Below, piece after piece: positions 586 to 35,590 of a stretch of 64,000 bases of DNA. The position numbers and the translations under genes are program-made. The notes under the pieces were generated by a model, which did no database searches, was not told where the DNA came from, and was given only the letters and a program-made list of their open reading frames with translations. Location: IMG/VR virus record IMGVR_UViG_3300044712_001462, positions 124,001 to 188,000 of that record. One strand, written 5' to 3'. Positions within the stretch are counted from its first letter, which is position 1. Every line of letters starts with the position of its first letter.

Positions 586-814
586 CGATCTATTCCCCCA
601 CTTGTATCCAACAATCACTGCAAAACGTCTTATTTCAACTATGACTGATCTGTGTTAGCGCTATCAGAGTCTGCGATTACCCAGTAGTTATCTGCTGGGA
701 AATACAGCCTGTTATCACCAATCTCGAGATAGTCGTCATTCGGCTTGAAGAAAGCCTTGATCTTCTCAAGCTCTTCACACGTCTTGATGTATTTAGGAAC
801 ATCCATACGCGCGA

Positions 815-1982: not shown

Positions 1983-2054
1983 AGCCGACGACTGGATTCG
2001 AACCAGTGTAAACTGATTTACAAAAACAGCGCCTAGCCACTCAGCCACGTCGGC
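1983..2054 (-). tRNA. trnT: tRNA-Thr(UGU), CCA not encoded
   Basis: Reverse complement GCCGACG-TGGCTGAGTGGCTAGGC-G-CTGTT TT TGT AA ATCAG-TTTAC-ACTGG TTCGAAT CCAGT-CGTCGGC-T. 7-bp acceptor stem, T-loop TTCGAAT, anticodon TGT, one U-U mismatch in the anticodon stem. Confidence 0.9.
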
Positions 2055-2127: not shown

Positions 2128-4115
2128 CTCTTTCGCAGTCTAACAACGGTTCAACTTGAAAGCGCACTCCCCGCGGCTCTCAGTCGCCGAATCATATCAC
2201 TCCGCAAATCTTCCCAAGCCTCATAGAGCTCAGATATGCCTGGCAGATCCTTAATCATCTCCATGGCCTCTTGCTCTACCTCCCACGTCCAATGCTCCTT
2301 AAAGGCGTCGAGGAACTTGCGAAAATCAACCTCTTTCCCCTCGATCGAGAACTCAATTCGGTAGTTCCCGTCCGGTGTTGGATCAGAAAAATCCCCAAGC
2401 GCCGCCATGATCGCACGCAGGAAGATTATTTTCTGGGTATGAGGTAACTGGGGATCATCAAACTTGATCACTTGCATTTCTTGATTTCCTTACTCAGCAG
2501 CTCACCCAAACGCCGGATTACCGAGTAGATGTTCGCCCGACCATCCCCGCTCTTCTCGTAATCCGCATCTGCAGAGAAGAACAGATTACGGCCAAAATGA
2601 CCGTTCCAATCTACCGTGTTGTAAAAGGCACCAGCTTTCTCCAAGGCATTAATCACCTTGGTTACAGACAGCCTATCCAAGGCCTCCCACTGCTCTTCGG
2701 TGAGAGGCACACAGACATCAAAGCGGGTAATCTCGTAATTCAGCTCCACCATTAATTGTTCTCCTCGTCAGGACTCTCAGCAGCCACCTCCAAGCCAATC
2801 TCACTTAGCGCTTTAGTGAGAGCGTCTTGAGATAGCTCGGAGCGCTGATCATTGTTCACGTTTACCGATCTTGGGAAACACCCCGCCTTTGAGAGCAGAA
2901 TGAATCAGGTTCAAAGTCTGACCTGGGCTGAACGTCTCAGACAATCTGTCATATAGCTCGTTGACCGAGGATACAACCCACTGAACGTCGTCTTCCATCT
3001 GGAGGGCTGGGGGCTTCGGCGCACCCGTCCCAGAGGCTGTAAGTATCTCCAGAGCCGAAAGAGCCTGTTGCATGAGATACGCGTCGTAGCCTGGTGAGCC
3101 ATGCAGCTGTCCAAGACGCGTTTTCAGAAGTTCAATAATCTCGAAGGGAGTCTTCTTTACAAAAGTATCTTCCGATTTACTGCCAGTAACTTCCACTGGT
3201 ACCTCCTTAGCGTTGTACGTCCGCTTGACTCGCTCCACCACTAGGAATTTGGTTCCACAGTGCGTGCACTGAGCCAGAAGCTCTGAGCCACATCGGGTGA
3301 CGGGTAGATGCGAGAGAACAAGCTGTCTTGAACACGCAGGACAAAACGGAACAGAAGTATTTTCGGCAAACAAGAACTCAGTACTCATACCGGATGTACC
3401 TTTGCTGAATTGGGGACAACGAAGCCATCGTGGTCAATATCCGCAGACAACAGAAAAGCCGCCTTTCTCCCGTCTGACTCCACCTGCTTCAAGGCTTGTT
3501 CCCTCGTGCCTCGCCAGAACTCGGCAATACCATCCGTAGTGATTACACGCCAGCGCTGGGTGACCGGAGGAACAAGTGCGTCATCTGACCATCTTCGGTC
3601 AACAAACGTCGTACCGTCTGTGTGGTAGGTGCTTATAAAACGATCATCTCCCGCAGCGCTTTCGACCACACCTATCAGAGTATGCTTCTCAGGCGCGCCT
3701 ATTGCCAACTCCGGAGGAAGTTCAGCCACGATCGTAACATCCCTATCAAAACCATCCTTATACCTACCCAAACCAAACTTATAGCCCACTGGTTTCTCCT
3801 CTTCTGTTTTGGACTCTGTGATAGCGCTATTTCGATTCAACAACTCATCCACCTCTATGAACCACCTGCGAGGTAGGTAAATATCCGCCTCCTGTTTCTC
3901 TCGCTCGTTTCGCTCGCCTTCGTAGGCGGAAGTCGCGTCCCAGGCTTCTACTAAGAGCTTGTGGTACCAGTTCAAAGCTCCCAGAATATCTAGAGCGTGC
4001 GCTTTGCCGTACCGAGCGTGAATCTCGCAAAGAGAGCTGCAGTAGTTCTGCGTCTCCATGGCTGTACACGAAGTATCCGTGTCATACTCTCCGCCGCACT
4101 GCTTACACGTTAATC

Positions 4116-8249: not shown

Positions 8250-11200
8250 GCTGCTCGTTTGATTTCTTTCCACCCGCAATCACACACATGTGCCTCACCT
8301 ATTGAATAGGGGCCGTTAAACGAACAACCACCAGCATGATCTCCGTATTTCAGCAGAGCGTTCTGCGCTTCCGCGAGCTGCTTGGTGAGGGATTCAACTT
8401 GTCGCGACATCTCAGATGCCCGCTTTGTCATCGCAATCAACTGCGACTTTCTCCCTTCCTCGTCCAGTGCGTCCCACAGCAATCCACCTGCTGTTGTCTC
8501 ACTCACTACTCCACCCTCCCTTCGCCGCATTGATTTTGTTAATGGTCTCATCCGTGATCGGTGACTGTTCTGCGACTACAGTTAGTGCCTCTACCCGTCG
8601 TCGCAGTTTGGTATTCTCCGCCCGCGCCTCCGCGAGCTGCCTATCACGCTCTGCAACGTCGAGGCGAGCTGCATCGCGTTCTGCTTGCGTGGTGCCAATA
8701 TCTCGGCACGCTTCCGTGAATGCGTTGAACCACCGCAGTTTTTCTGCATTTGCCTCCGCGAGCTGCTCTCGGAGTTCATCGTTCTCCTGCCGTTCGCGAT
8801 CGTACAGTTCCCATACGTCTCGTTCTCTGCTCACGATCTCCGCCCTTCTTTCTCCGCAATAGCCGCAGCTGCAATCGTGGCATCCGCGACCCAAGCCAAC
8901 TTCATGGACTCAATCTGTTCTCGCAGTTCAGTGATCTGGTCTTCGCGGTTGTTACAGGCCTTAAGCGTGTCGAGGTATTTTGCATGACTGTCACGCGCTG
9001 CCTGTTGATTATCCTCAAGCTGTTTCTTGAGCTCGGCAAGTTGCTTTTCATGCCTTTGAGAAATTCGCAGAGCCAGTCGCTCTCTCGCCTCATCGAACAT
9101 GGCAGCACCAACGCTGGCATAAATGCAGCAGATGTTGTTGATGTCCTTGCGGACTAATTCAGCTTCACTCATGATTTTTTACCGATTTTTGGATCCTGTA
9201 TTTGCAAACTGATAAGAAGTACGCTGTCGGCTGTATTGTCGCGTGCGATTCTGAAGTCCGTTTGTCCAGATGAATCCACACGCACGACAGCGGTATGCAC
9301 GCCTACCATCTAGTGAGCGGCCTTTTTCTACATCTGCACATCGACAGCGCTCACACTTCACAATCTTCTCCTTCTTCCTCGCTGCTGTAGTTCGGATTGA
9401 TCTTGCCGCAGCGGATACAAAATGGTGACTGAAAATAACACCATCTCTCATAGTACAAGAGACCTTTATCTCGCGTACTCACCAGAATTTTGGATATCCA
9501 TCTATGCCCCAGCAAACCACACAGAAACCACCTCAGCATTACTCACTCCTCCACCTGTTTGCGAACATCCATTTTAGCTCTACGCCGAGCACGCTTATTC
9601 ATGGCTCGCTTCACCTGTTTACCCAGGCCTGTCCAGTTGTCATACACCTTGAGAACCCAGCGCCATCCAGACGTCCAATCCATTTCGTTTCCATTCTTGG
9701 CAGGCTCTTTGCGCATCTCTGGTCTCCCTATCAACTCAGAACTCGTATCAAACGCTAATTCCGCGAGCGCCATGTGATAAACATCCAGCCACCTATCGGG
9801 CCAGTAACAAGGATCGTGGTCACAAAAAGGAAGAGGAGCTATGCGCTCCTCGTGATCTGCAATATGGGACGCTCTGAGAGCCAGGTTAGCTGTGTGGTGC
9901 TTCATTGTCCCGTTCGGTAAAACACATGGTTATTCGTCCTCCTGATCGACGGGTTTATCCTGTTCGGGATCGTTTTCGTCCCTATCGGGATTATCCACTA
10001 GCCACGGATAAAACTCTTTCCAGTCCTCAACTAGTTGTCGCAGCTCAGGAATACCTCCCGACATCGGCAGCAACGTAGTCTTAAAAAGGATTTTCGCGGC
10101 TTCTCTAGCTTCCCGTAGATCTTTGTGAATATCCGTCTTGTTCTCAGGAGCCAGATACTTCTCGTGGAGACTGTAAGAGTGTGTGTATGCGGATTCCTGT
10201 CAGCATCCCTGTGCATCCAGCCAGTACTCCGTGTCTGGGATGAACAGCAACACAAAGTGGTCGTCTCGGTAGTCGACTGATTCAATGCGGCCTGTGGCCC
10301 CTCGGGCTAGAGTCTTATCACAATGCTTCCAGCCTCCAGAACAAGGTACTTCTCCCACGATTTTGGCTCTTTCGCCCTCTTTAACCGGCGCAAACCGAGT
10401 AAGAAGCGCCTCACTATGTTTCACCAGTTTATCCAACGTGTACTCGATGGGCCCTTGTCGAAACTTGTTCACCGCTTTGTACAAATACTGTAGAGCCTCT
10501 TTAACGTCATCAATGTCCATCGCAGTCCTCTTCCTTTTTGTGAAAACAAAGGTTCACACGGCGCTCTAGAGCCCTCAATCTGTTCAGTTCGGTAGTCTGG
10601 TCCTCCATCTTCCACCGCAACCGCTCATACCTGAACGACTGAATGACCACCGTCACCGCAGACGCCAGACATAAAACAAACAACATGACATGATCAAACG
10701 CGCTCATCTGAATTCCCTTTCAGCTTGTCGTACTGTTTCCATACCTGACAGAGGATGCACGACTCTTCATAATCAGGACAGCGTTCTCCCCATTGCTCCT
10801 CGATCGCCTCCACGATGGGATCCTTTTCCGGCTCAGCCTCTTCCTGACTGCAAGGTCGCACTGAAGACAAAAACTCAGACTGTCGGATGCGCTCCGCCTC
10901 AAACTCCTGACAGACCTTTGTAATAGCGCTATCTCGATGTCGGATCGACTCTAGGAGCCAGTTGACGGTGAACGTCTTTTGTTCCAGCTCCTTCTTCGCG
11001 GTGACCAGCTGCTTGATCAGCTCTGATTCCCTTCTTGTGCAGTTCCAGTACTGCCCATCATGCCCCCACCAGTACCCATCTGGAAACTCAAGAGCTTGGT
11101 AATCAGTCAGCCCGTCTTCTACTTTGATACCTGTAAAACGCATGCGATCTCCTACTCTGAAAGTCGTTTCACTGTTTCCCTGAGCCGCCGAATCTCTTCC

Positions 11201-14137: not shown

Positions 14138-14160
14138 AAAAGGTAACCAGGTGGTCACGT

Positions 14161-14189
14161 ATTATGCCGCTAGGGAGCCCGGAATTTAG
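14161..14189 (-). promoter_or_regulatory. phage promoter class A
   Basis: Reverse complement CTAAATT CCGGGCTCCCTAGCGG CATAAT; the -35-like box overlaps the upstream stop codon. Confidence 0.75.
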
Positions 14190-14713
14190 CTGGCGCGAGA
14201 GAGCTCATTCGCCTGCAACACACCCGTCTTCCTCGTTGCCACAGTAATGTGGAACTTGAACTCATTGTCTTTAGGAAGCGGCGTGAGCCCATAGCTTTTT
14301 CTTAGCTGTTGGAGCTCAGGCGAATTCACTTCAATAAACCAGACGCGAGAGATACCGGGCCACCCGGCCGGTTTAACCGACCGGAGTGGACCCAGTGTAT
14401 ACCTGAAGACCTGACCCCGTTCTTTGACTTTGTCAGGTCCGCCGATCTGGTCAAGATCTTCGGGCCGCAGCACAGAAATATGTGCATTGAACCCCGGCGG
14501 AAGTTCGGCTCCCGGTTCATGAAGCGCGGCGAACGCTCCACGTACAAGAGCGTTGGGGACTGATAGCAGGCCCCAACCGGACTGGGAGATGAACAATCGA
14601 CCTCCTAAGCTGTACGACAGCTCAGGCGTATCTGCCGCCCGTTTTACGGCGTACCTGCCGAGCAGTTCGGGCAACTGCAGATCGTAACTGTCTGTTATCG
14701 ATATCAGAGACAT
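14186..14713 (-). CDS. 2H phosphoesterase (LigT/Acb1-like superfamily)
   Basis: Two HxS/T motifs, AHISV and FHITV, about 76 aa apart in a 175-aa protein. Confidence 0.75.
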   Translation of the reverse strand: MSLISITDSYDLQLPELLGRYAVKRAADTPELSYSLGGRLFISQSGWGLLSVPNALVRGAFAALHEPGAELPPGFNAHISVLRPEDLDQIGGPDKVKERGQVFRYTLGPLRSVKPAGWPGISRVWFIEVNSPELQQLRKSYGLTPLPKDNEFKFHITVATRKTGVLQANELSRAS

Positions 14714-14716
14714 AAA

Positions 14717-14870
14717 GGGCCTCCCTGCCCGTTACGATCAACCAACTTCGCTGTCACAGAGATGCATGAGCATCTAACTGGTCTCGGTTTTACCACGCAG
14801 TCCCGTGTGCGCTACTTAAAGTCTGCATCCGTGCAGAGGGATCGATCTAAAACGGCTGTGAAAAGCATCT
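14717..14870 (-). ncRNA. candidate structured 5' leader of the 2H phosphoesterase
   Basis: Stems CCGTT/AACGG, GATCGA/TTGATC, TCTGCA/TGCAGA, GCGCA/TGCGT and AGATGC/GCATCT; a GGGC-AGGGAG-GCCC hairpin covers the SD. Confidence 0.45.
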
Positions 14871-14909
14871 ACTAAATAATGTAGCCAGGCTCTTCACATT
14901 AGCGCTAGG

Positions 14910-15887
14910 TCAAACGGCTACGGCCTGATCCGAGAACTCTGCAATTGCTTCCTGCCAGGTGGGCATCTCAATCGGAGTCAGGGCTTCCAACTTCTCGATC
15001 GAGAGGGGTGTGGAGTGCACAATCTCAGCAGGCGAATCCCCCATCAGCTGAGCGATCTCCTTGTGCGGAGCGGGTTCGAAAACACGCCCCTGCCAATGAA
15101 TCGCGTTTCGGAGCCGGTATGCAAAGTCAAAGGGCGTGGTCACACCCGAGTTTGCCACATGGTACAGGCCCTGAGGTACCGTCTTCCGGTTCTCAGCCAG
15201 CCAAATGATGACCTTAGCCAGATGCGGCACAAAGCACGGAGTAATCTTCAGATCGTTCGCCAACAAGTGCGAAGGCATTTGTGACGTTCTAGGAGGAGAC
15301 AGAACCTGCTGAGTCAGATCCGTCCGCCACTGACGGTGCTCTGAATACGGAGAAAACAGATGGCCGCATCGGAGAACCCAGTACGAGAAGCCATCGAGCT
15401 GACCCGTCTGGCCCAAACGCATGACTGCGTGCTCGGAATAGGACATGGCAGAGGCCAGGAAGTTGGGAGGGGCCACAGGATCGGTCTCTGTGTACAGATG
15501 AGATGAGGGCTGCATCCCCATCCCAAATACCGAGTGGCACGATAGATGAATTAGTGGGATCTTGAGGAAGGCACCAAGCTTGGCCAGGTTATCTGCCCCC
15601 CGGACAAGCGTATTCCACGTTTGTTCCCTGTTTCGGGCGGCTGCCCTCCAGTCTGCAACTCCCGCGGTGTTAACAATGACGTCTGGCTTCAACAGCTCAA
15701 GCTGCTCGCGGCAAGCCTGAAAATTCGAAACATCAAGCATCTCTCTGGTTTTAACAACGTAATTCCTGACCCCTCCTCCATTCTGTGCATCAAGTTCTCG
15801 TACAATCGCTGATCCTAATTGTCCCGTCGTCCCGGTAATCAGTATCTGGGCGCGTCTTCTCGATACCATATCTTCCCCTATTGACAA
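14910..15887 (-). CDS. rmlD: RmlD (dTDP-4-dehydrorhamnose reductase)-like extended SDR, catalytic motif degenerate
   Basis: ILITGTTGQLG, KPDVIVNTAG, YTETD, GLYHVAN and MPTWQEAI. The canonical STDYVF and YxxxK positions read SCHSVF and LASAM. Confidence 0.75.
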   Translation of the reverse strand: MSIGEDMVSRRRAQILITGTTGQLGSAIVRELDAQNGGGVRNYVVKTREMLDVSNFQACREQLELLKPDVIVNTAGVADWRAAARNREQTWNTLVRGADNLAKLGAFLKIPLIHLSCHSVFGMGMQPSSHLYTETDPVAPPNFLASAMSYSEHAVMRLGQTGQLDGFSYWVLRCGHLFSPYSEHRQWRTDLTQQVLSPPRTSQMPSHLLANDLKITPCFVPHLAKVIIWLAENRKTVPQGLYHVANSGVTTPFDFAYRLRNAIHWQGRVFEPAPHKEIAQLMGDSPAEIVHSTPLSIEKLEALTPIEMPTWQEAIAEFSDQAVAV

Positions 15888-17603: not shown

Positions 17604-18787
17604 GCAGCTTCAGCCGTCTCAGTCTCCTTGTCAGAGGGCTCCTCAGCCGGGACCGGGTCAGGTCGCAACACCTTTCTTCGGGTCGTCTCAGAAGACATAC
17701 CCATGATCGAGGTGAACAATTCATCCATGCGTCCCAATACGAACTCACGCTGCGTCCCATCTTTCCGCAAACGATTCGCTACCGTCGTAGCATCCTCGCC
17801 TACCCCTTTCAGAACGTTGTGGAGCTCTTCGAACTGGGCCCCAATCTGGCGACCATTCAAGATGCCAAACGGCTCAATCTTCGACTTGTACTCCTCAATC
17901 GCTTTGAAGACGCGCTCAATCACGCCATCCTTAAACGACTTTTGCGTACCATCCTGCCAGCCGCGGATCGAAGACACCATCTGCTGCAAACCCATCGCCA
18001 TCGCTTCTTCGATCAACTCCGCCTGCTTCTCAGCGACTTCGGTAAATTGCGCATTCAGTCGCGCCTGTTGTCGCCGGTATTCAGCCGGGTTCACCGCCTT
18101 CAAATACTCCGGCAACTCGAAGTTGTAGGTCTCAAAGCCCACGCCGATCTCCTGGTGGAGCCGTTCAGACGTCGGGTAATCCGACTCGTCATGCAACTCT
18201 CGGAGACGCTCCCGACACGTCGCCATGACTTCTGACCAGTTATTAGCCAGCTCATCAATAGCCTGCCGGAAGTCTGAGATCAGATCGTTGATCTCATCCA
18301 GGAACACACGCACTTCCTCATTCTGATCCTGTTCGGTCTCCCCGCGGACACCAAACAAGCGCACCCCATCTTCGGGGTACTTGAGGGTTTTCGATTGCCA
18401 GTACTTGATGAGCTTGGCCTTGGCCACCTGAACCGCGTGAATCGAAGGATGCTTCGCATACAACACTTTAGTAAAGCGGAGATGCGAGGGATCGCAGTCC
18501 ACGCTGCCAGCCAGCTTATGCGCTGCATCACCCTTAATCTTCCGGCTCTTACTCAGGTCATTGAACTTCAACCGGAAAGCTCGGGCGACTGCCTTAATGG
18601 TCTGCCCAGCTTCACGATAGCGCTCACGCTGTACCGCACGATCTTCTGCTGGAGGCAGATCCGCCAGCATCTTATCCACCTGCTCTTTGGTCAGGTGCTT
18701 CGTTGTCGTCTTCTTCTTTTTCTTCGACGACTTCTTCCCCACGTGCTGCTTAAGCTTCTGTAACAATTCAGGAGAGATACTTGCCAT
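17600..18787 (-). CDS. helical coiled-coil protein, DUF3150-like, partner of the AAA ATPase
   Basis: YWQSKTLKYPEDGVRLF...RERLRELHDESDYP motif; coupled to the ATPase through TAATG. Confidence 0.55.
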   Translation of the reverse strand: MASISPELLQKLKQHVGKKSSKKKKKTTTKHLTKEQVDKMLADLPPAEDRAVQRERYREAGQTIKAVARAFRLKFNDLSKSRKIKGDAAHKLAGSVDCDPSHLRFTKVLYAKHPSIHAVQVAKAKLIKYWQSKTLKYPEDGVRLFGVRGETEQDQNEEVRVFLDEINDLISDFRQAIDELANNWSEVMATCRERLRELHDESDYPTSERLHQEIGVGFETYNFELPEYLKAVNPAEYRRQQARLNAQFTEVAEKQAELIEEAMAMGLQQMVSSIRGWQDGTQKSFKDGVIERVFKAIEEYKSKIEPFGILNGRQIGAQFEELHNVLKGVGEDATTVANRLRKDGTQREFVLGRMDELFTSIMGMSSETTRRKVLRPDPVPAEEPSDKETETAEAA

Positions 18788-21700
18788 TAGTTAACATTGG
18801 GTCGAACTACCGACCGCCTCTTACCTCCGCCAGTGATGTCTGACACGCTGACCACTTGTTTCGCTCCTACATCGTAAAGCCCCGGAGCTGAGGCGTTCAA
18901 ACATCGTCCAGAGGCCCAGGCTCGCAGATCCTGCAGTTTGGTATCTGCCATTCGAGTGACAGGTACCACCTGCTTCGCAGCTTCGTCCAGAGAAACCTCA
19001 CGAATTGCCGCTAGGCGACAGCACGCCTTAATTTCAGCACCCGTCCAGCCCTCACTCAGCGTAAGGAGACTGTGCTTCACCTTGTCTGTCCGCGACTCCG
19101 CATGGCCATACAGATGCAAGTAGATCTGCCAAATAGCCAGGCGCTCTTCCTCTGTGGGAACATCCACAAAGAACACCGCATCAAAACGCTCCGCCCGAGA
19201 GAATTCTGGTGGGAGCATCGAGATGTTGTTGCAATTATGAACCACAACCCCAGACGCCATAAACGAGTGATGGGGCTCCTCAATAACCACATCGTAAACA
19301 GTCTGCTCACCAAGCGGAGAGGGTTCAACAGACACCACACTGACCCACTTCTGAGACCAAATACGTCGAACCTGCTCCAGCTCGTCTGCAATTTCGCGAG
19401 CCGCAGACTCGGACATCTTGGCAACATAGTGATCTACAATCACCTGCCACAACTCCGCCGTATCCGCCGATATTAGCGGAGTGTACTGCCTGTAGTTTGG
19501 CAACACCGATGTATAGCGACCAGCCGCTTTTAAAATAATCTCCAAACAATCATGCATTCCCGGAACACTCCGAACTCCATCTCCGTTAACCTCCTTAGGC
19601 CTACATATCCGACTTTTCTTGTCCGGGTGCTGAAACGGAATGAGCTGTGCAAACCGATGACAAGACTCCGAATCGCGGATACTCAGCTTAGTTACATCCT
19701 TGCGAGGAAGCTTTCGCGAAATCGTTGCAACAGAACCTTGAATATCAAATCTCGTTAAGAGAAGTCGAAGCTGGTCGATCATGACTGGGCTAGTTACCGC
19801 AATCTCAATTCGCCCACGTTTACTGATATAGCCCTCGGCGTCAAAAAGACCCGCTATAAAGGACAACACCACATCCTTGTCCGGAGATGCCATTACATCT
19901 TGAGGTATTTCTCGCACACATTGCAGGCATAAGATGTCTGGAAAATACTGCTCAAACCAATCTAACAGAAGACGACGATCCAGATAGATGTAGTACGACT
20001 GTGCTTTTGGACGCTTATCAATAACCTTTGGCTCTACTCCAAACAAACTACGAATCAGCGAGCATAGGTGCTGAGTCAGACCTGCGCTAAACTCAGATAA
20101 TTGAAGCCGATGGGCCTTCCTGTTTAAAAGCTTACCTTTACCCCCGTCCCCGCAGCAAAATCCAAGAAAATACGCCAATTCTGCTGTTAAGTACTCTGGT
20201 TGTTTAACAGGTTTCTGTCGGGATCGTGCTGGTAACGGCAGATACCGTTTTGCGGGTTTTGATCCCACTGGAGCTTTAGCTTTAGAAAGCAATAGATCAT
20301 CAGCAGTAAGATGCTTCGCTTCTTTCTCAGCTATTTTACCGTTTTGAAAGACAAAGAATCTGTGATCAGGCGTTGCATCGATGAACCCAGCTGACGTACG
20401 TATGCGTAGCATGTCGCGAATACCGCGGCTGTACACTAGCCCGGAGCCAGATACCCACTGACCAGTCTCGTCATCCACACTCAGGAACGTTTCACGTTGG
20501 CCTACAAGCGACTCAAGTTTACAGATACGCCCGTCCGCCAACTCAACAAGTGTTCCACCGGCCAAACACGTACCGATGAAAAACACATCTGACGTATGGT
20601 CGTTCAACCAACTGAGTAACTTACCAAAAATGCGATCACCAGAGCCGCCATCTGTCATCGATGATGACTGACCTGCTCCGGACAGTGCTTTCTCGATTTC
20701 CACTTGTGTTACGAGATACCCGTTTCCGGTACCTCTCTTACGGTTACCCGTAAGGTCAGACTATTTCATCCTGTCGCTGCGACAGGGCCCCCGTTTCGAG
20801 ATCACTTGATCTCTACTTCCTTTCGGAATAGTCGTTGAACGTTTCAGTCATAGACTGACTTCGCTGCAGATAATCCAGGCTAGTGGACTTCCCTGCAATT
20901 AGAGGGCTTTGCATCGGCATGTCACCACGCCGAGGGACTAACGTTAATCCACAAAGAGAATGCACGGCTGCATAGCATCAGCCAGCTTCAGAGCCATCCG
21001 GACATTGGCATCCGTTTCACCCTGAAACTTCGATCTGAGTGCGCCCATATCCATCATGAGCACTTTGCGCTGGGTCTCATTACCCATCGCCTTAATGATC
21101 GCACTCTTACCGGCACCAGGCACACCAAGGAGCAGCATACCACGAGGCTGAAGCAGAGGATTATCTCGTCGCCGAAGTAGCTGCTTCGAGAACTCCTTGA
21201 ATTGCTGCAACCCACCCAACTGCGCATAAGTGTCTGTGCCTTTGTAGATCTCCAGTACACCGCGCTTCTTGAGATCCTGAGCCTTCAGGTCCCAGATCTC
21301 ATTGGGATCGAGCTTACCGGTCTTCGCCAGAGACAAACTCAGAGCATCCTCGAAACCACGTCGAGACAATCCCGCCGCAGCATCTAAGACCAGTCGTTTG
21401 TCGTCATCCGTTTTAGGTAACTCCGTCTCCGCACAGATGTTCTTAGCGATCGACCAGAGTTGTTCCTTACCTGGCAGCTCGTGCTCCAGGATTACAAAGT
21501 CCTTCTCTAGCTCTCGAGGGATCTCAATCATCGGAGAGAGCACAATGGCGCAGCAGGAGACCTGGCCCTCCGCCTTACAATCCGTTACCGCGTTCTGCAG
21601 AGCCTGCATGATGGGTAGGTTGTGAACCAGCTGCTGGTGATGGAAATTCTTGAGAATCCAGATGACGTGAGTAGCACCCTCGCTACCCTGGGACTCTTGA

Positions 21701-21981
21701 GCCTGCCGAAGGGCCAGAGACATCACAGGCATGTCCTGAACCAACGGGAGAGGCTTCATCTGGTAGTTAGTATTCTTCGAAATGAAATCTCTTAGCGTCT
21801 CAGCTGTATCTCGGGGGCATTTGAGGCCCGCGGCGAAGTCCCACACAATGACCGGCCATTGTCTCTCAGCACATACCGGTACGATCTCTGCGATAGCATC
21901 CCCAAACTCATAAGTCTCAACCCAAAGGCCGGTGAAACCGGCTCGCAAATACTGCCGTACTTGCTCCCCAAGTGCTGGCAC
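18787..21981 (-). CDS. Ycf46-like AAA+ ATPase, join(21981-20947, 20700-18787); ~537 aa after intron and intein removal
   Basis: Walker A GVPGAGKS; Walker B ILFVD|EIEK restored by splicing; sensor-1 FIGT|CNNI restored by intein excision; arginine-finger region PPEFSRAERFD. Confidence 0.9.
19234..20568 (-). mobile_element. intein (445 aa) with LAGLIDADG homing endonuclease
   Basis: N-terminal CLAGGT, block B ATPDHRFF, LAGLIDADG motifs LAYFLGFCCGDG and FIAGLFDAEG, block F TVYDV, C-terminal VVHN followed by +1 Cys. Confidence 0.93.
20701..20946 (-). ncRNA. group I self-splicing intron (246 nt, no ORF)
   Basis: The 5' exon ends in U, paired U.G in P1 (GGAU/GUCC). Core elements P AATTGCAGGGAA, Q ATCTGCAGC, R GTTCAACGACTA, S GAAATAGTCT; terminal G. 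Removal fuses GAT|GAA in frame. Confidence 0.93.
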
Positions 21982-23447: not shown

Positions 23448-23729
23448 TTACACTTTGTATCCGCGTTTCCTCAATTCCGCGTCAGCATGTACCACGCTGC
23501 CAGGGATACTAGTAGAGCGCATGGGCTCAGGGCGCGTCGAGGTTGCCTCAAAAAAACACTGGAGAGCGCGCCTGCTCGTAAAAATCCGTCCACCTATGCG
23601 CAGAGTATCTAACAGAACCCCGCGATAACCGACGGTGGCCCAGCGCCAGACTGTCGAAGAAGATGTTTTCCCAGGTAACGCCTTCGCTGCCTCAGAGAGC
23701 GAAAGCACGTCTTCGTCGTCGAATTTCAA
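23448..23729 (-). CDS. DUF1580-like HTH protein, putative excisionase/recombination directionality factor
   Basis: LSLSEAAKALPG...STVWRWA..G.RGV.L.T.RIGGRIFTSR.AL..FF; overlaps the integrase stop. Confidence 0.75.
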   Translation of the reverse strand: MKFDDEDVLSLSEAAKALPGKTSSSTVWRWATVGYRGVLLDTLRIGGRIFTSRRALQCFFEATSTRPEPMRSTSIPGSVVHADAELRKRGYKV

Positions 23730-24919
23730 CCAAATTCCTCCGCAATTGATCGAGCCAGCTTCAAGTTCTTCTCCGCGTAGATTTCGCTGGTGCGAATATG
23801 CTTGTGCCCTAACAACACCTGGCTGCCTTCTACCCCGTACTTTTCACGTACGCGAGTAGCAAGGTTGTGCCGGAGCTGATTAGGAGCCCACGGAGTTACT
23901 CCTGCTGTGATACACGCTCGCTGAACTGCGCGCCGATAGGAATTGTGGTCATAGTGTGTCCCAGGTGATTTCACACGTCTTATCTTGCGGTTAGAGCCTG
24001 GTTTGTTACCGCACGATACGGGAGTAGTGCGCCGCTTATGTCGGGCGGCTAAACGCTGCTCTTCCGCCTCCCGCGGTGAAAAGCAGTATTCCAAGGGTGA
24101 TCGTTGCAAAAAGCGACGGAGTATTTTCTGCGCCCGTCGCCCTATCGAAATTTCCCTGCGAGCATCTTCCTGGTGTGCCAGCTTGTGATCAGGTGGCACG
24201 TAGAGCCACACGGGATCTTTCATGGAAATATCACACGGCCTGAGAAGACAGATCTCCATCGGCCTCATCCCTGTCCAGTACTGCAAACGAACCATCTGCG
24301 CCACCACTTTGGGCAGGTATGGAATCGTCTGTCTCAAGTCTTTCTCAGGCACCGGCAAAATCTTTTCGGTCTCCCTGGCCTTCGTCAGCCCTTTTCTTAA
24401 CCCTTCGAGGGTATTGAGATGAGCATGCGTATTCTTCTCTACCAGCCCAGCGCTCTCTGCCCACTTGAAGAGCCGCTTCACACAACCGATATACCGGTTC
24501 ACCGTGGAGCGCGAGAGCTTGCCTTCGCGGACTAACTGGGACTGGAGATCTCGGAGAGACCGAGCATCAAAGCGATCAGCTAACGTGTGCCCATAGTATT
24601 TGAGCAGCACATCGTTAGCCGCCTTGATTACCGCTACCTGGGAGGATAGCTTCCCCCTCTTAGACTGGTAACGGATATCCACGAACTCGTCCAGATAGCG
24701 CAGGACGAGGTGGTTGACGAACAGCGGTTGAGACCTCTCTTTGGCCACCACCGCGGACCCAGGATGCACCTGCCTCCCAGCGAGATGGTCGGCAATGAGC
24801 TGCGTACCCTGCGCCTCTGCAGAGCTCTTTTCCCGGCCTAAATAAATTCGCTTTCCAGCGATGTGAACGTAGAACTGACCGGTTGCGGCATGCAGACGAA
24901 CTTGGGGTTTGCGTGGCAT
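23726..24919 (-). CDS. int: tyrosine integrase
   Basis: Arm-binding N-terminus (RLHAATGQFYVHIAGKRIYLG); catalytic TGMRPMEI, NQLRH, LLGH and IYA. ATG at 24919. Confidence 0.92.
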   Translation of the reverse strand: MPRKPQVRLHAATGQFYVHIAGKRIYLGREKSSAEAQGTQLIADHLAGRQVHPGSAVVAKERSQPLFVNHLVLRYLDEFVDIRYQSKRGKLSSQVAVIKAANDVLLKYYGHTLADRFDARSLRDLQSQLVREGKLSRSTVNRYIGCVKRLFKWAESAGLVEKNTHAHLNTLEGLRKGLTKARETEKILPVPEKDLRQTIPYLPKVVAQMVRLQYWTGMRPMEICLLRPCDISMKDPVWLYVPPDHKLAHQEDARREISIGRRAQKILRRFLQRSPLEYCFSPREAEEQRLAARHKRRTTPVSCGNKPGSNRKIRRVKSPGTHYDHNSYRRAVQRACITAGVTPWAPNQLRHNLATRVREKYGVEGSQVLLGHKHIRTSEIYAEKNLKLARSIAEEFG

Positions 24920-24929
24920 GGCTGACCTT

Positions 24930-25207
24930 TTTAGTTGGTAGTCGACTACCAACTAAACTGTAAAGCAATCAGCAGGCCAGCCCTGGCTGTTTTCCTAAGT
25001 TCTTATGCTGTAAGGCTTTACTGAGTGGGCCGTGACAGACTCGAACTGTCGCCCTCTTGCATGTCAAGGAAAAACAGGCGAAATGAGGTCACTCGTAAAA
25101 ACGGCCCAAAACCTTTACAGATAAGCACTTAAGCGTCATTGCATACTTCGCAGCTGGCTTTACTTTTTGCCCATTTTTTCAGCGATAGTTGGTAGTTAGT
25201 TGGTAGT
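24930..25207. other. attP site: tRNA-derived core flanked by arm-type repeats
   Basis: TAGTTGGTAGT at 24932-24942, inverted at 24945-24955, and tandem direct at 25186-25196 and 25197-25207; the core at 25026-25068 lies between them. Confidence 0.8.
25026..25068 (-). pseudogene. 3' half of tRNA-Val(GAC), attP core
   Basis: Reverse complement C-TTGACAT-GCAAG-AGGGC-GACAG TTCGAGT CTGTC-ACGGCCC-A gives the anticodon loop, T-arm and acceptor 3' strand; the 5' half is absent. Confidence 0.85.
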
Positions 25208-35576: not shown

Positions 35577-35590
35577 TAATAGCGATATCA
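35577..35590. promoter_or_regulatory. operator-like motif inside a leader hairpin
   Basis: TAATAGCGATATCA just downstream of promoter 35602; embedded in the inverted repeat at 35571-35596. Confidence 0.55.

What the first reader, a model, noticed from the sequence alone, without database searches (positions are those of the whole stretch)
14186..14885. 2H phosphoesterase under a riboswitch-like structured leader
Seen: a ~155-nt non-coding leader with a multi-branch fold. The closing stem (GCCGTT/AACGGGC) overlaps a GGGC-AGGGAG-GCCC hairpin that buries the SD, and the 5' AGATGC and TCACAG offer alternative pairings with GCATCT and CTGTGA. The gene has two HxS/T motifs. Known: phage 2H enzymes include Acb1, which degrades CBASS signals, and others resolve RNA 2',3'-cyclic phosphates. 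Inference (speculative): an RNA switch controlling an anti-defence or RNA-repair enzyme, possibly sensing a nucleotide signal.
Basis: partly seen in the sequence, partly recalled or inferred. Interest (0 to 1): 0.62.

Follow-up and report, generated by a model that had tools for sequence, protein, structure and literature searches.

The report
Structured leader before phage 2H gene
A 196-base non-coding stretch in front of a two-histidine phosphoesterase gene of an uncultured 224-kb phage carries small RNA hairpins that its closest relatives keep, so it is probably a local control element, but nothing shows that it is a riboswitch and most related genes lack it.

Summary
The gene (window 14186-14713, minus strand, 175 aa) is a real 2H phosphoesterase: Pfam 2H-SAK above cut-off, both His motifs invariant in 44 relatives, and a predicted fold that matches only 2H enzymes. 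The window lies in a complete 224,528-bp phage record. The whole-leader fold is no better than chance (z -1.7 to -1.95, 10th of 27 comparable gaps). The Shine-Dalgarno sequence sits in a hairpin loop and is not buried. No Rfam family matches. Three local modules are conserved: a post-stop hairpin with compensatory changes; a bipartite stem-loop with an apical UGGUAAMWCCG and an outer stem that differs in sequence but stays paired in seven lineages; and an invariant GGGC-ARGGAG-GCCC hairpin. These modules occur only in the nearest subclade. Of 64 other distinct 2H loci, 63 lack them, including two with the same upstream epimerase gene and gaps of 9 and 26 nt. My reading is a lineage-specific cis-regulatory leader, more likely read by a protein than by a small molecule. 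The enzyme looks more like an RNA-end healer than Acb1. Relatives are fused to kinase, NUDIX, LigD-phosphoesterase or HAD domains, and many sit directly behind a tRNA-Asn gene.

The parts
14186..14713 (-). Stand-alone 2H-SAK phosphoesterase gene, 175 aa (P0001). HxS at H78 and HxT at H155. The 2H domain is about residues 44-168, with a roughly 43-residue N-terminal extension.
   Evidence: Pfam PF22547 E 3.3e-11, 43.9 bits against a cut-off of 27. Both His are invariant in 44 relatives. AF2 model pLDDT 86. All PDB matches with Z of 5 or more are 2H enzymes.
14714..14909 (-). Non-coding leader or intercistronic spacer of 196 nt, single copy in the genome.
   Evidence: No ORF is kept in frame among kin. 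Identity to L002/L003/L088 exceeds all 200 shuffled controls.
14900..14907 (.). Palindrome TAGCGCTA, 2 nt after the epimerase stop. It is a partial copy of a genome-wide motif GAGATAGCGCTATTACAAA and a candidate promoter or operator.
   Evidence: About 10 oriented copies in the genome, mostly 6-25 nt before start codons. Kept in L002-L004, absent from L005.
14858..14897 (-). Hairpin 1: GUGAAGAGC / GCUUUUCAC around a 22-nt loop that holds the conserved GGCUACAYUA.
   Evidence: -16.6 kcal/mol, z -4.4, 0 of 200 shuffles as good. Four to five pairs change on both sides between the window and L002-L004, whose stem is CGAAUGCCACG/CGUGGCAUUCG.
14823..14836 (-). Hairpin 2: CUGCA-CGGA-UGCAG.
   Evidence: z -4.2. 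Kept in L088, L002, L003; deleted in L005 and L089.
14802..14812 (-). Conserved 5' flank GCGCRC-AYGRG, 11-12 nt before the core hairpin.
   Evidence: Present in six lineages.
14776..14802 (-). Bipartite stem-loop: outer stem GACUG/CAGUU, an internal loop, and an inner hairpin UGGUAAAACCG (core at 14785-14795).
   Evidence: The core UGGUAAMWCCG is kept in seven lineages, and the outer stem has a different sequence in each but still pairs: GGUUGG/CCAACU, GAUUGG/CCAGUU, GAUUGG/CCAAUU, GUGCA/UGCAU, CCAGC/GCUGG, CCUGUGUU/GACACAGG. Shuffle p is 0.002-0.12 for each. The MFE shape is the same in the four lineages folded: the window, L214, L089 and L005.
14754..14775 (-). Local hairpin AGAUGC-UCAU-GCAUCU followed by CUGUGA.
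   Evidence: Present but not conserved in kin. The long-range alternative is at chance level when each sequence is tested alone.
14717..14730 (-). SD-displaying hairpin GGGC-AGGGAG-GCCC, 3 nt before the AUG at 14713-14711.
   Evidence: GGGCARGGAGGCCCU is invariant in six lineages down to 70% protein identity. -7.4 kcal/mol. Unique in the genome.
14910..15887 (-). Upstream RmlD-like NAD-dependent sugar epimerase/reductase gene.
   Evidence: Pfam RmlD_sub_bind E 2.7e-34. The gene pair with 2H is kept in L002, L005, L089, L091 and L231.
14143..14158 (-). Terminator-like hairpin with a U run, 28 nt after the 2H stop codon.
   Evidence: This is a consensus match only.

Best explanation
The 196-nt spacer is a lineage-specific, selectively maintained cis-acting RNA leader of a stand-alone 2H-SAK phosphoesterase gene in an uncultured 224.5-kb phage. 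It is modular rather than one aptamer. It has a strong hairpin just after the upstream stop codon. It has a small bipartite stem-loop whose apical UGGUAAMWCCG is fixed while its outer stem differs in sequence from lineage to lineage and stays paired. It has an invariant 4-bp G+C hairpin that holds the Shine-Dalgarno purines in its loop, 3 nt before the AUG.

Inferred, not shown: these fixed hairpins are recognition sites for a trans-acting macromolecule, most likely a phage or host RNA-binding protein and possibly the enzyme itself. Binding would set translation initiation or the fate of the 2H mRNA, in the manner of phage translational operators.

The enzyme itself most likely opens 2',3'-cyclic phosphate ends, which is RNA-end healing after tRNA or mRNA cleavage. 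Degrading cyclic-oligonucleotide signals as Acb1 does is less likely.
For: Shown:
- It is non-coding and single copy.
- Hairpin 1 has 4-5 compensatory pairs between two lineages and z -4.4.
- The stem-loop core is kept in seven lineages. The outer stem differs in sequence in each but remains paired, with per-lineage shuffle p of 0.002-0.12. Combining four independent lineages by Fisher's method, calculated by hand, gives about 1e-4.
- The 15-nt SD hairpin block is invariant where third codon positions are only 28-48% identical.
- The core's distance to the start varies: 82 nt in the window, 60 in L089, 246 in L214. Hairpin 2 and the middle hairpin come and go. This pattern fits separable binding sites better than a single folded aptamer.

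For the enzyme:
- 2H-SAK family and 2H fold.
- Relatives fuse the domain to a P-loop kinase (AAA_18/AAA_33), NUDIX, LigD 3'-phosphoesterase plus pyrophosphatase, or GNAT plus HAD.
- 16 of 56 distinct viral loci place the gene 10-18 nt (14 loci) or 245 nt (2 loci) behind a tRNA-Asn(GUU) gene.
- PMC7824862 places jumbo-phage 2H enzymes in 2',3'-cyclic phosphate clearing and RNA repair.
Against: - No binding protein is identified and no RNA data exist. No run on record as RNA holds the locus.
- There are only seven lineages, four of them close, so the covariation has little statistical power.
- Invariant hairpins carry no covariation, so the SD hairpin could be conserved as sequence only.
- The own genome has no Rnl or RtcB ligase, LigD-PE, pyrophosphatase or NUDIX partner. 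A complete heal-and-seal pathway is therefore not encoded.
- Structural matches do not separate Acb1 (Z 7.3) from LigT-like, Usb1 or CNPase (Z 6.1-6.5).
- The conserved neighbour is a sugar epimerase, which fits neither reading.
Confidence: 0.4

Rival explanations
1. It is a riboswitch. The stem-loop, its GCGCRC-AYGRG flank and perhaps the closing stem form a small aptamer for a nucleotide-type ligand, for example a 2',3'-cyclic nucleotide or a cyclic oligonucleotide. Ligand binding shifts the pairing of G14730/G14729 between the closing stem and the SD hairpin.
For: - It is a long conserved leader before a nucleotide-acting enzyme.
- Stems that differ in sequence but stay paired surround fixed loop and flank nucleotides.
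- The closing stem and the SD hairpin share two G residues.
- Three lineages each have a 6-8-bp pairing between the 3' strand of hairpin 1 and a segment 16-24 nt before the SD hairpin. The sequences differ: UCACAG/CUGUGA, UGUCGUGG/CCACGACA, GUUACUG/CAGUAAC.
Against: - No Rfam family matches, even at E up to 10 here or up to 5 in the kin.
- The whole-leader fold is at chance level.
- Each alternative pairing is at chance when tested alone (p 0.03-0.5), and its positional agreement was noticed after the fact.
- The closing stem loses pairs in L002 and L003 without compensation.
- The core lies 60 to 246 nt from the start.
- The element is absent before 63 of 64 other distinct 2H loci.
Confidence: 0.1
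2. The conservation is mainly at DNA level. The spacer holds a phage-specific promoter or operator (the TAGCGCTA palindrome, and perhaps GCGCRC ... TGGTAAAAC) for a separately transcribed 2H gene, and the hairpins are by-products.
For: TAGCGCTA belongs to a motif with about 10 oriented copies, mostly just before genes. The spacing between GCGCRC and TGGTAA is fixed at 11-12 nt. The two kin without the spacer have the 2H gene 9 or 26 nt behind the epimerase, as in an operon.
Against: - There is no sigma-70-like promoter.
- TGGTAAMAC lacks the conserved last T of a -10 box, and the GCGCRC spacing of 14 nt is too short for a -35 box. This is judged from established promoter knowledge.
- Compensatory changes in hairpin 1, and an outer stem that stays paired although its sequence differs in every lineage, are expected for RNA and not for protein-DNA sites.
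- The core motif occurs once in the genome.
- TAGCGCTA is missing from L005, which keeps the other modules.
Confidence: 0.2
3. A translated upstream mini-ORF of 16-18 codons, starting at 14868 in the 3' strand of hairpin 1, couples ribosome passage to refolding of the leader. This would be leader-peptide attenuation.
For: An ORF of 16-18 codons starts at the same place in the window, L088, L002 and L003. L003 carries two indels that restore the frame at its end.
Against: There is no SD before it, and the start is GUG in three of the four. The window's reading frame differs from L088 and L002 over the last third. There is no counterpart in L005, L089 or L214. The four sequences are close relatives, so survival of a short ORF is weak evidence.
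Confidence: 0.05
4. It is a largely neutral relic of an insertion between the epimerase and 2H genes. Only the SD region is functional, and the rest is conserved because the lineages diverged recently.
For: The leader is present only in one subclade. The whole-leader fold is at chance. The middle part is variable, with indels.
Against: Synonymous sites of the adjacent gene are near saturation (third positions 45-48% identical to L088, L002 and L003; 28-37% to L005 and L089). Meanwhile blocks of the leader are invariant, and the stems either show compensatory changes or stay paired despite different sequences.
Confidence: 0.15

Closest known systems
Phage translational operators (MS2/Qbeta/PP7 coat-protein hairpins, T4 gene 43 and gene 32 operators, lambda boxB-type hairpins). 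The comparison is from established knowledge.
   Same: They are small hairpins at or near the ribosome-binding site, with fixed loop nucleotides and free stem sequence. They are lineage-specific and read by a protein.
   Different: No binding protein is known here. The SD lies in the loop, not the start codon. A second fixed hairpin lies 60-246 nt upstream. Nothing has been tested experimentally.
Nucleotide-sensing riboswitches (c-di-GMP-I/II, cGAMP/GEMM-Ib, ydaO c-di-AMP, 2'-dG, ykkC ppGpp/PRPP, nadA, preQ1-I, guanidine-II)
   Same: A long structured 5' leader before a gene acting on nucleotides, with possible competition between a long-range stem and an SD hairpin.
   Different: No covariance-model match. 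The conserved core is about 30 nt at a variable distance from the start. It is not distributed with the gene family.
2H-SAK domain (Pfam PF22547), and the 'Swiss-army-knife' RNA-repair proteins of Burroughs and Aravind 2016 as cited in PMC7824862
   Same: The Pfam match is above cut-off, and two HxS/T motifs are present. Relatives are multi-domain proteins with kinase, NUDIX, HAD or LigD-PE modules.
   Different: Here the domain stands alone. No ligase, kinase or phosphatase partner was found in the genome.
Acb1 anti-CBASS nuclease (PDB 7T26/7T27)
   Same: It is a phage-encoded small 2H enzyme and the best structural match (Z 7.3, rmsd 3.7 A, 109 residues).
   Different: Identity is 12%, and there is no sequence-level match to any PDB chain. 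The Z is tied within 1 with LigT-like TT0787, Usb1, CNPase and drCPDase. The fusion partners and tRNA linkage of relatives point to RNA ends.
LigT/ThpR and Trl1-CPD type RNA 2',3'-cyclic phosphodiesterases
   Same: The 2H fold (Z 5.3-6.5). One relative pairs 2H with a P-loop kinase, as in the Trl1 healing module.
   Different: The Pfam LigT and 2_5_RNA_ligase2 matches are below cut-off. No activity is known.

Membership tests
2H phosphoesterase superfamily | Two H-x-S/T motifs | tested here: met
   H78-I-S and H155-I-T. Both His are invariant, and the S is nearly invariant, in 44 relatives.
2H phosphoesterase superfamily | The two-lobed alpha+beta 2H fold | tested here: met
   AF2 model pLDDT 86. 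Nearly all of the 38 PDB chains with Z of 5 or more are 2H enzymes. Foldseek E-values are weak, at 0.01 or above.
Pfam 2H-SAK (PF22547) | Score above the curated cut-off | tested here: met
   43.9 bits against 27; 44.3 bits in the genome scan.
Swiss-army-knife RNA-repair proteins | The 2H domain is combined with phosphatase, kinase or other end-processing domains in one protein or operon | tested here: not met
   The window protein is a single domain. The genome lacks RNA_ligase, RtcB, LigD_N, InPase and NUDIX matches. The feature is met in relatives.
Acb1 anti-CBASS nucleases | Specific sequence or structure kinship with Acb1 above other 2H families | tested here: inconclusive
There is no PDB sequence match.
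Acb1 anti-CBASS nucleases | Cleavage of 3'3'-cGAMP, cA3 and related signals | not testable with these tools
   Needs an enzyme assay.
Known riboswitch classes (Rfam 15) | Covariance-model match | tested here: not met
   No match on the leader at E up to 10, none in the kin's leaders at E up to 5, and none at gathering score in the window.
Riboswitch (generic) | Conserved aptamer with covarying helices | tested here: inconclusive
   One small stem-loop keeps a paired outer stem of different sequence in each of seven lineages. The multi-branch fold and closing stem are not supported.
Riboswitch (generic) | Occurs with the regulated gene family across lineages | tested here: not met
   The core motif is absent upstream of 63 of 64 other distinct 2H loci. 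Collection-wide pattern scans gave only chance hits without a 2H gene.
Riboswitch (generic) | Ligand-dependent structural change | not testable with these tools
   Needs in-line probing or SHAPE.
Intrinsic terminator / sigma-70 promoter in the leader | Consensus match | tested here: not met
   None within 14714-14909.
tRNA or tRNA-like element in the leader | ARAGORN or Rfam tRNA match | tested here: not met

The most novel reading that the evidence does not exclude
The UGGUAAMWCCG stem-loop with its GCGCRC-AYGRG flank is the core of a new, very small RNA sensor. It would be either a riboswitch for a product of RNA damage or of immune signalling (a 2',3'-cyclic nucleotide or a cyclic oligonucleotide), or an operator bound by the 2H enzyme itself. 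Either way the phage would switch on its phosphoesterase only when the host's RNA-cleaving or nucleotide-signalling defence fires.
Probability: 0.08. Interest if true: 0.8.

Novelty: new member of a known kind. Interest (0 to 1): 0.36.

Why it matters
If the leader is a real control element, a jumbo phage times or gates a 2',3'-cyclic-phosphate-type phosphoesterase after transcription. That would give a handle on when such counter-defence or repair enzymes are needed. The motif is not in Rfam, so it would be a new, narrowly distributed phage cis-regulatory RNA. As it stands this is a modest, lineage-specific finding. The broader lead is the side observation that multi-domain 2H-SAK genes of many large phages sit directly behind a tRNA-Asn gene. 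That ties this little-studied domain to tRNA damage and is easy to test.

Tried and rejected
- Rfam scans of the leader, of the kin's leaders and of the whole window found nothing on the leader.
- tRNA-like origin of the leader: no ARAGORN or Rfam tRNA signal.
- Repeated element: the leader and both fixed hairpins are single copy in the genome.
- Phage GenBank records gave no DNA or protein match.
- The PDB profile search gave no sequence relative.
- Pattern scans:
  - GGGCARGGAGGCCCT in viral contigs gave 119 or more chance hits, none next to a 2H gene.
  - The core-to-SD-hairpin pattern (TGGTAAMACCG, a gap of 20-50 nt, then GGGCARGGAGGCCC) gave 0 hits in genome contigs.
  - The flank-plus-core pattern gave 2 viral and 13 genome hits. 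All lacked a 2H gene, and I judged them chance matches; the 13 genome hits are no more than my rough estimate of chance allows.
- The profile scan of genome contigs failed because no conserved stretch was long enough.
- Alternative 'switch' pairings are not above chance when each sequence is tested alone. Their agreement in position across three lineages is suggestive but was noticed after the fact.
- Anti-SD (CCUC) pairing and a loop-to-spacer pseudoknot were checked by eye on the alignments and showed no consistent covariation.
- TGGTAAC at the very start of the L091 and L231 genes was judged coincidence. TGGTAA occurs at the expected rate (7 in about 23,000 positions).
- RNA evidence: no listed holder of the locus is on record as RNA. 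The one possible RNA run (X6, marked a guess and probably DNA) gave a single 54-nt match under 90% identity inside the gene. Contigs of run X2 only showed a roughly 94%-identical relative with two leader variants.
- The large representative protein search and the complex prediction were not used. Neither would change the verdict.
Full report
**What is there**

The window is bases 124001-188000 of a single 224,528-bp virus record (52.8% G+C, rated complete). It has about 294 crude ORF-genes, 254 of them on the minus strand.

The finding's gene is the minus-strand ORF 14186-14713, 175 aa. It matches Pfam 2H-SAK (PF22547) at E 3.3e-11 and 43.9 bits, against a cut-off of 27. The LigT-type models fall below their cut-offs.

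A word search found 170 relatives, all metagenomic or viral and none named. In an alignment of 44 of them, H78 and H155 of the two HxS/T motifs are invariant.

An AlphaFold model (pLDDT 86) matches only 2H enzymes in the PDB. Foldseek E-values are weak (0.01 or above). VIA-align gives Z 7.3 for Acb1 and 6.1-6.5 for TT0787, Usb1, CNPase, drCPDase and others.

The subfamily remains open.

**The leader as observed**

The gap to the upstream gene is 196 nt (14714-14909). That gene is an RmlD-like sugar epimerase/reductase at 14910-15887.

Three parts of the description do not hold:
- The whole-leader fold is not better than shuffles. z is -1.70, with 11 of 200 shuffles as good and an MFE frequency of 0.012. 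My own shuffles give z -1.95, which ranks 10th of 27 same-strand gaps of 120-320 nt in this genome.
- A 196-nt gap is not unusual here: 29 of 293 crude gaps are 190 nt or longer.
- The SD is not buried. Its purines form the loop of the 4-bp GGGC/GCCC hairpin.

No Rfam family matches the leader at E up to 10. There is no sigma-70 promoter or intrinsic terminator in it and no tRNA-like signal.

**Relatives**

Contigs encoding the closest proteins were fetched. Eighty viral loci came from a profile scan.

The epimerase-leader-2H arrangement is kept in L002/L004, L003 (87% protein identity), L005/L086 (76%) and L089 (71%). L088 (90%) has the leader on a short contig.

One-base indels among these leaders break the only small ORF of 16-18 codons. 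That ORF also lacks an SD and is absent from L005, L089 and L214. The stretch is therefore non-coding.

Third codon positions of the adjacent gene are only 45-48% identical between the window and L088, L002 and L003, and 28-37% to L005 and L089. The leader's identity to the three closest kin exceeds all 200 shuffled controls. Parts of the leader are therefore under constraint.

**Three conserved modules**

1. Hairpin 1 (14858-14897) folds at -16.6 kcal/mol with z -4.4. Between the window (GUGAAGAGC/GCUUUUCAC) and L002-L004 (CGAAUGCCACG/CGUGGCAUUCG), four to five pairs changed on both sides and stayed paired.

2. A bipartite stem-loop (14776-14802). The inner hairpin UGGUAAMWCCG is fixed in seven lineages, including L214 at 62% protein identity. 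The outer stem has a different sequence in each:
   - window: GACUG/CAGUU
   - L088: GGUUGG/CCAACU
   - L002: GAUUGG/CCAGUU
   - L003: GAUUGG/CCAAUU
   - L005: GUGCA/UGCAU
   - L089: CCAGC/GCUGG
   - L214: CCUGUGUU/GACACAGG

   Shuffling the flanks gives p of 0.002-0.12 per lineage. Taking four independent lineages, a Fisher combination done by hand gives about 1e-4. The window, L214, L089 and L005 were folded on their own, and all four gave the same shape as MFE. A GCGCRC-AYGRG flank sits 11-12 nt upstream in six lineages.

3. The block GGGCARGGAGGCCCU, 3 nt before the start codon, is invariant in six lineages. L214 keeps a decayed copy about 130 nt before its start.

**What is not conserved**

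- Hairpin 2 is missing from L005 and L089.
- The AGAUGC/GCAUCU hairpin is specific to the window.
- The closing stem loses pairs in L002 and L003 without compensation.
- The separate MFE folds of the six leaders share no global architecture.
- The alternative pairings are at chance when each leader is tested alone (p 0.03-0.5).

I did notice that three lineages each pair the 3' strand of hairpin 1 with a segment 16-24 nt before the SD hairpin, using different sequences. This is suggestive of a two-state design. It is a post-hoc observation, and I do not count it as support.

**Distribution**

- The core motif is absent upstream of 63 of 64 other distinct 2H loci.
- Two lineages with the same epimerase neighbour have gaps of only 26 and 9 nt and no leader. 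They are L091 (65%) and L231 (61%).
- The leader and both fixed hairpins are single copy in the genome.
- Scans of the viral and genome collections with leader patterns returned only matches that lacked a 2H gene, and I judged them chance matches.
- The relatives' leaders also have no Rfam match.

The element is therefore an acquisition of one small subclade, not a feature of the gene family.

**How it most likely works**

This part is inference. Small hairpins with fixed loops and free stems, separable modules, a variable distance to the start (60, 82 and 246 nt) and a narrow distribution are the signature of protein-read operators. They are less typical of a metabolite aptamer coupled to an expression platform.

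I therefore favour a lineage-specific cis-regulatory leader that controls translation initiation or mRNA fate through a trans-acting factor (confidence 0.4). The rivals are:
- a small-molecule riboswitch (0.1);
- a mainly DNA-level promoter or operator reading (0.2);
- a leader-peptide mechanism (0.05);
- a largely neutral relic (0.15).

The DNA-level reading gains some weight from the palindrome TAGCGCTA at 14900-14907. It is a partial copy of a motif, GAGATAGCGCTATTACAAA, that occurs about ten times in the genome. Those copies are in gene orientation and mostly 6-25 nt before start codons.

No RNA data could be found. The locus is held by rhizosphere and activated-sludge DNA runs only.

**The enzyme's role**

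- Relatives found through DNA loci are often much longer than the 0.55-1.75x length range that the word search can see.
- They fuse the 2H-SAK domain to several partners:
  - NUDIX plus DUF5661;
  - a P-loop kinase (AAA_18/AAA_33);
  - LigD 3'-phosphoesterase plus a pyrophosphatase domain;
  - GNAT plus HAD.
- In 16 of 56 distinct viral loci, a tRNA-Asn(GUU) gene lies 10-18 nt (14 loci) or 245 nt (2 loci) upstream on the same strand. There are 12 different tRNA sequences, and the 2H proteins of these loci are 53-99% identical to one another.
- PMC7824862 assigns jumbo-phage 2H enzymes to 2',3'-cyclic phosphate clearing and RNA repair.
- Together these points favour RNA-end healing over an Acb1-type role. 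The structure search cannot exclude the latter.
- The window's phage encodes no Rnl or RtcB ligase, LigD-PE, pyrophosphatase or NUDIX partner.
- Its conserved neighbour is a sugar epimerase. That remains unexplained.

**Verdict**

The enzyme class and a conserved structured non-coding leader stand. The riboswitch and ligand sensing do not.
- It is a new, narrowly distributed member of a known kind, a phage cis-regulatory leader.
- Interest is 0.36.

Noticed in passing
L030, L032, L047, L049, L053, L060, L064, L069, L071, L076, L080, L081, L084, L085 (about 2280-2410); L050 and L068 (2051-2132): A tRNA-Asn(GTT) gene lies 10-18 nt (14 loci) or 245 nt (2 loci) upstream, on the same strand, of multi-domain 2H-SAK genes. 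This holds in 16 of 56 distinct viral loci, many on 100-235-kb contigs. It suggests co-transcription and a link between this enzyme family and tRNA-Asn damage.
   Followed up: partly
L063:2465-5299, L007:2408-4285, L008:2456-3850, L030:2411-4255, L049:2402-4327: In relatives the 2H-SAK domain is fused to LigD 3'-phosphoesterase plus InPase, GNAT plus HAD, NUDIX plus DUF5661, or a P-loop kinase (AAA_18/AAA_33) plus DUF5661.
   Followed up: partly
window 20737-20956 (-), with 20944-21981 (-) and 18787-20703 (-): A group I intron (Rfam RF00028, 71 bits, E 5e-16) splits an AAA-type ATPase gene. The downstream part of that gene also carries an intein with a LAGLIDADG domain. This gap is one of the most structured in the genome (z -4.9).
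   Followed up: partly
window 655-664, 3821-3830, 10923-10932, 14900-14907, 35579-35588; G000:C1 9522, 17551, 57323, 74895, 89451: An oriented motif GAGATAGCGCTATTACAAA, with a palindromic core ATAGCGCTAT, recurs about ten times. It is mostly 6-25 nt before start codons and may be a phage promoter or operator.
   Followed up: partly
window 14910-15887 (-); L002:1793-2737, L005:1842-2819, L089:1-315, L091:1497-2474, L231:532-1491: An RmlD-like NAD-dependent sugar epimerase/reductase gene directly precedes the 2H gene in at least six lineages, with or without the leader. Glycosyltransferase genes lie nearby in L231 and L215. No functional link is known.
   Followed up: no
window 23726-24952 (-): A tyrosine-integrase-like gene (PHROG 1, E 3e-30) in a 224-kb phage genome hints at a temperate or integrating life style.
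   Followed up: no
L214:1167-1301: In L214 a decayed copy of the SD hairpin block (ACGGGCAAUGAGGCCGC) is separated from the real start codon by about 115 nt of A-rich GCUAAAAGC-type repeats.
   Followed up: no
G000:C1:196013-196204 and G000:C1:37857-38049 (both outside the window): Two same-strand intergenic gaps fold far better than shuffles (z -6.9 and -5.6). They are stronger structured-RNA candidates than the leader studied here.
   Followed up: no
window 1983-2054 (-): The only tRNA gene of the whole genome is tRNA-Thr(TGT). It overlaps the start of a mechanical ORF at 1639-2040.
   Followed up: no
L066:548-1627 and 24 other loci of the tRNA-Asn clade: A Volactin-family (actin-like, PF25216, E 5.5e-60) gene recurs about 1-2 kb upstream of the 2H-SAK gene in 25 loci.
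   Followed up: no
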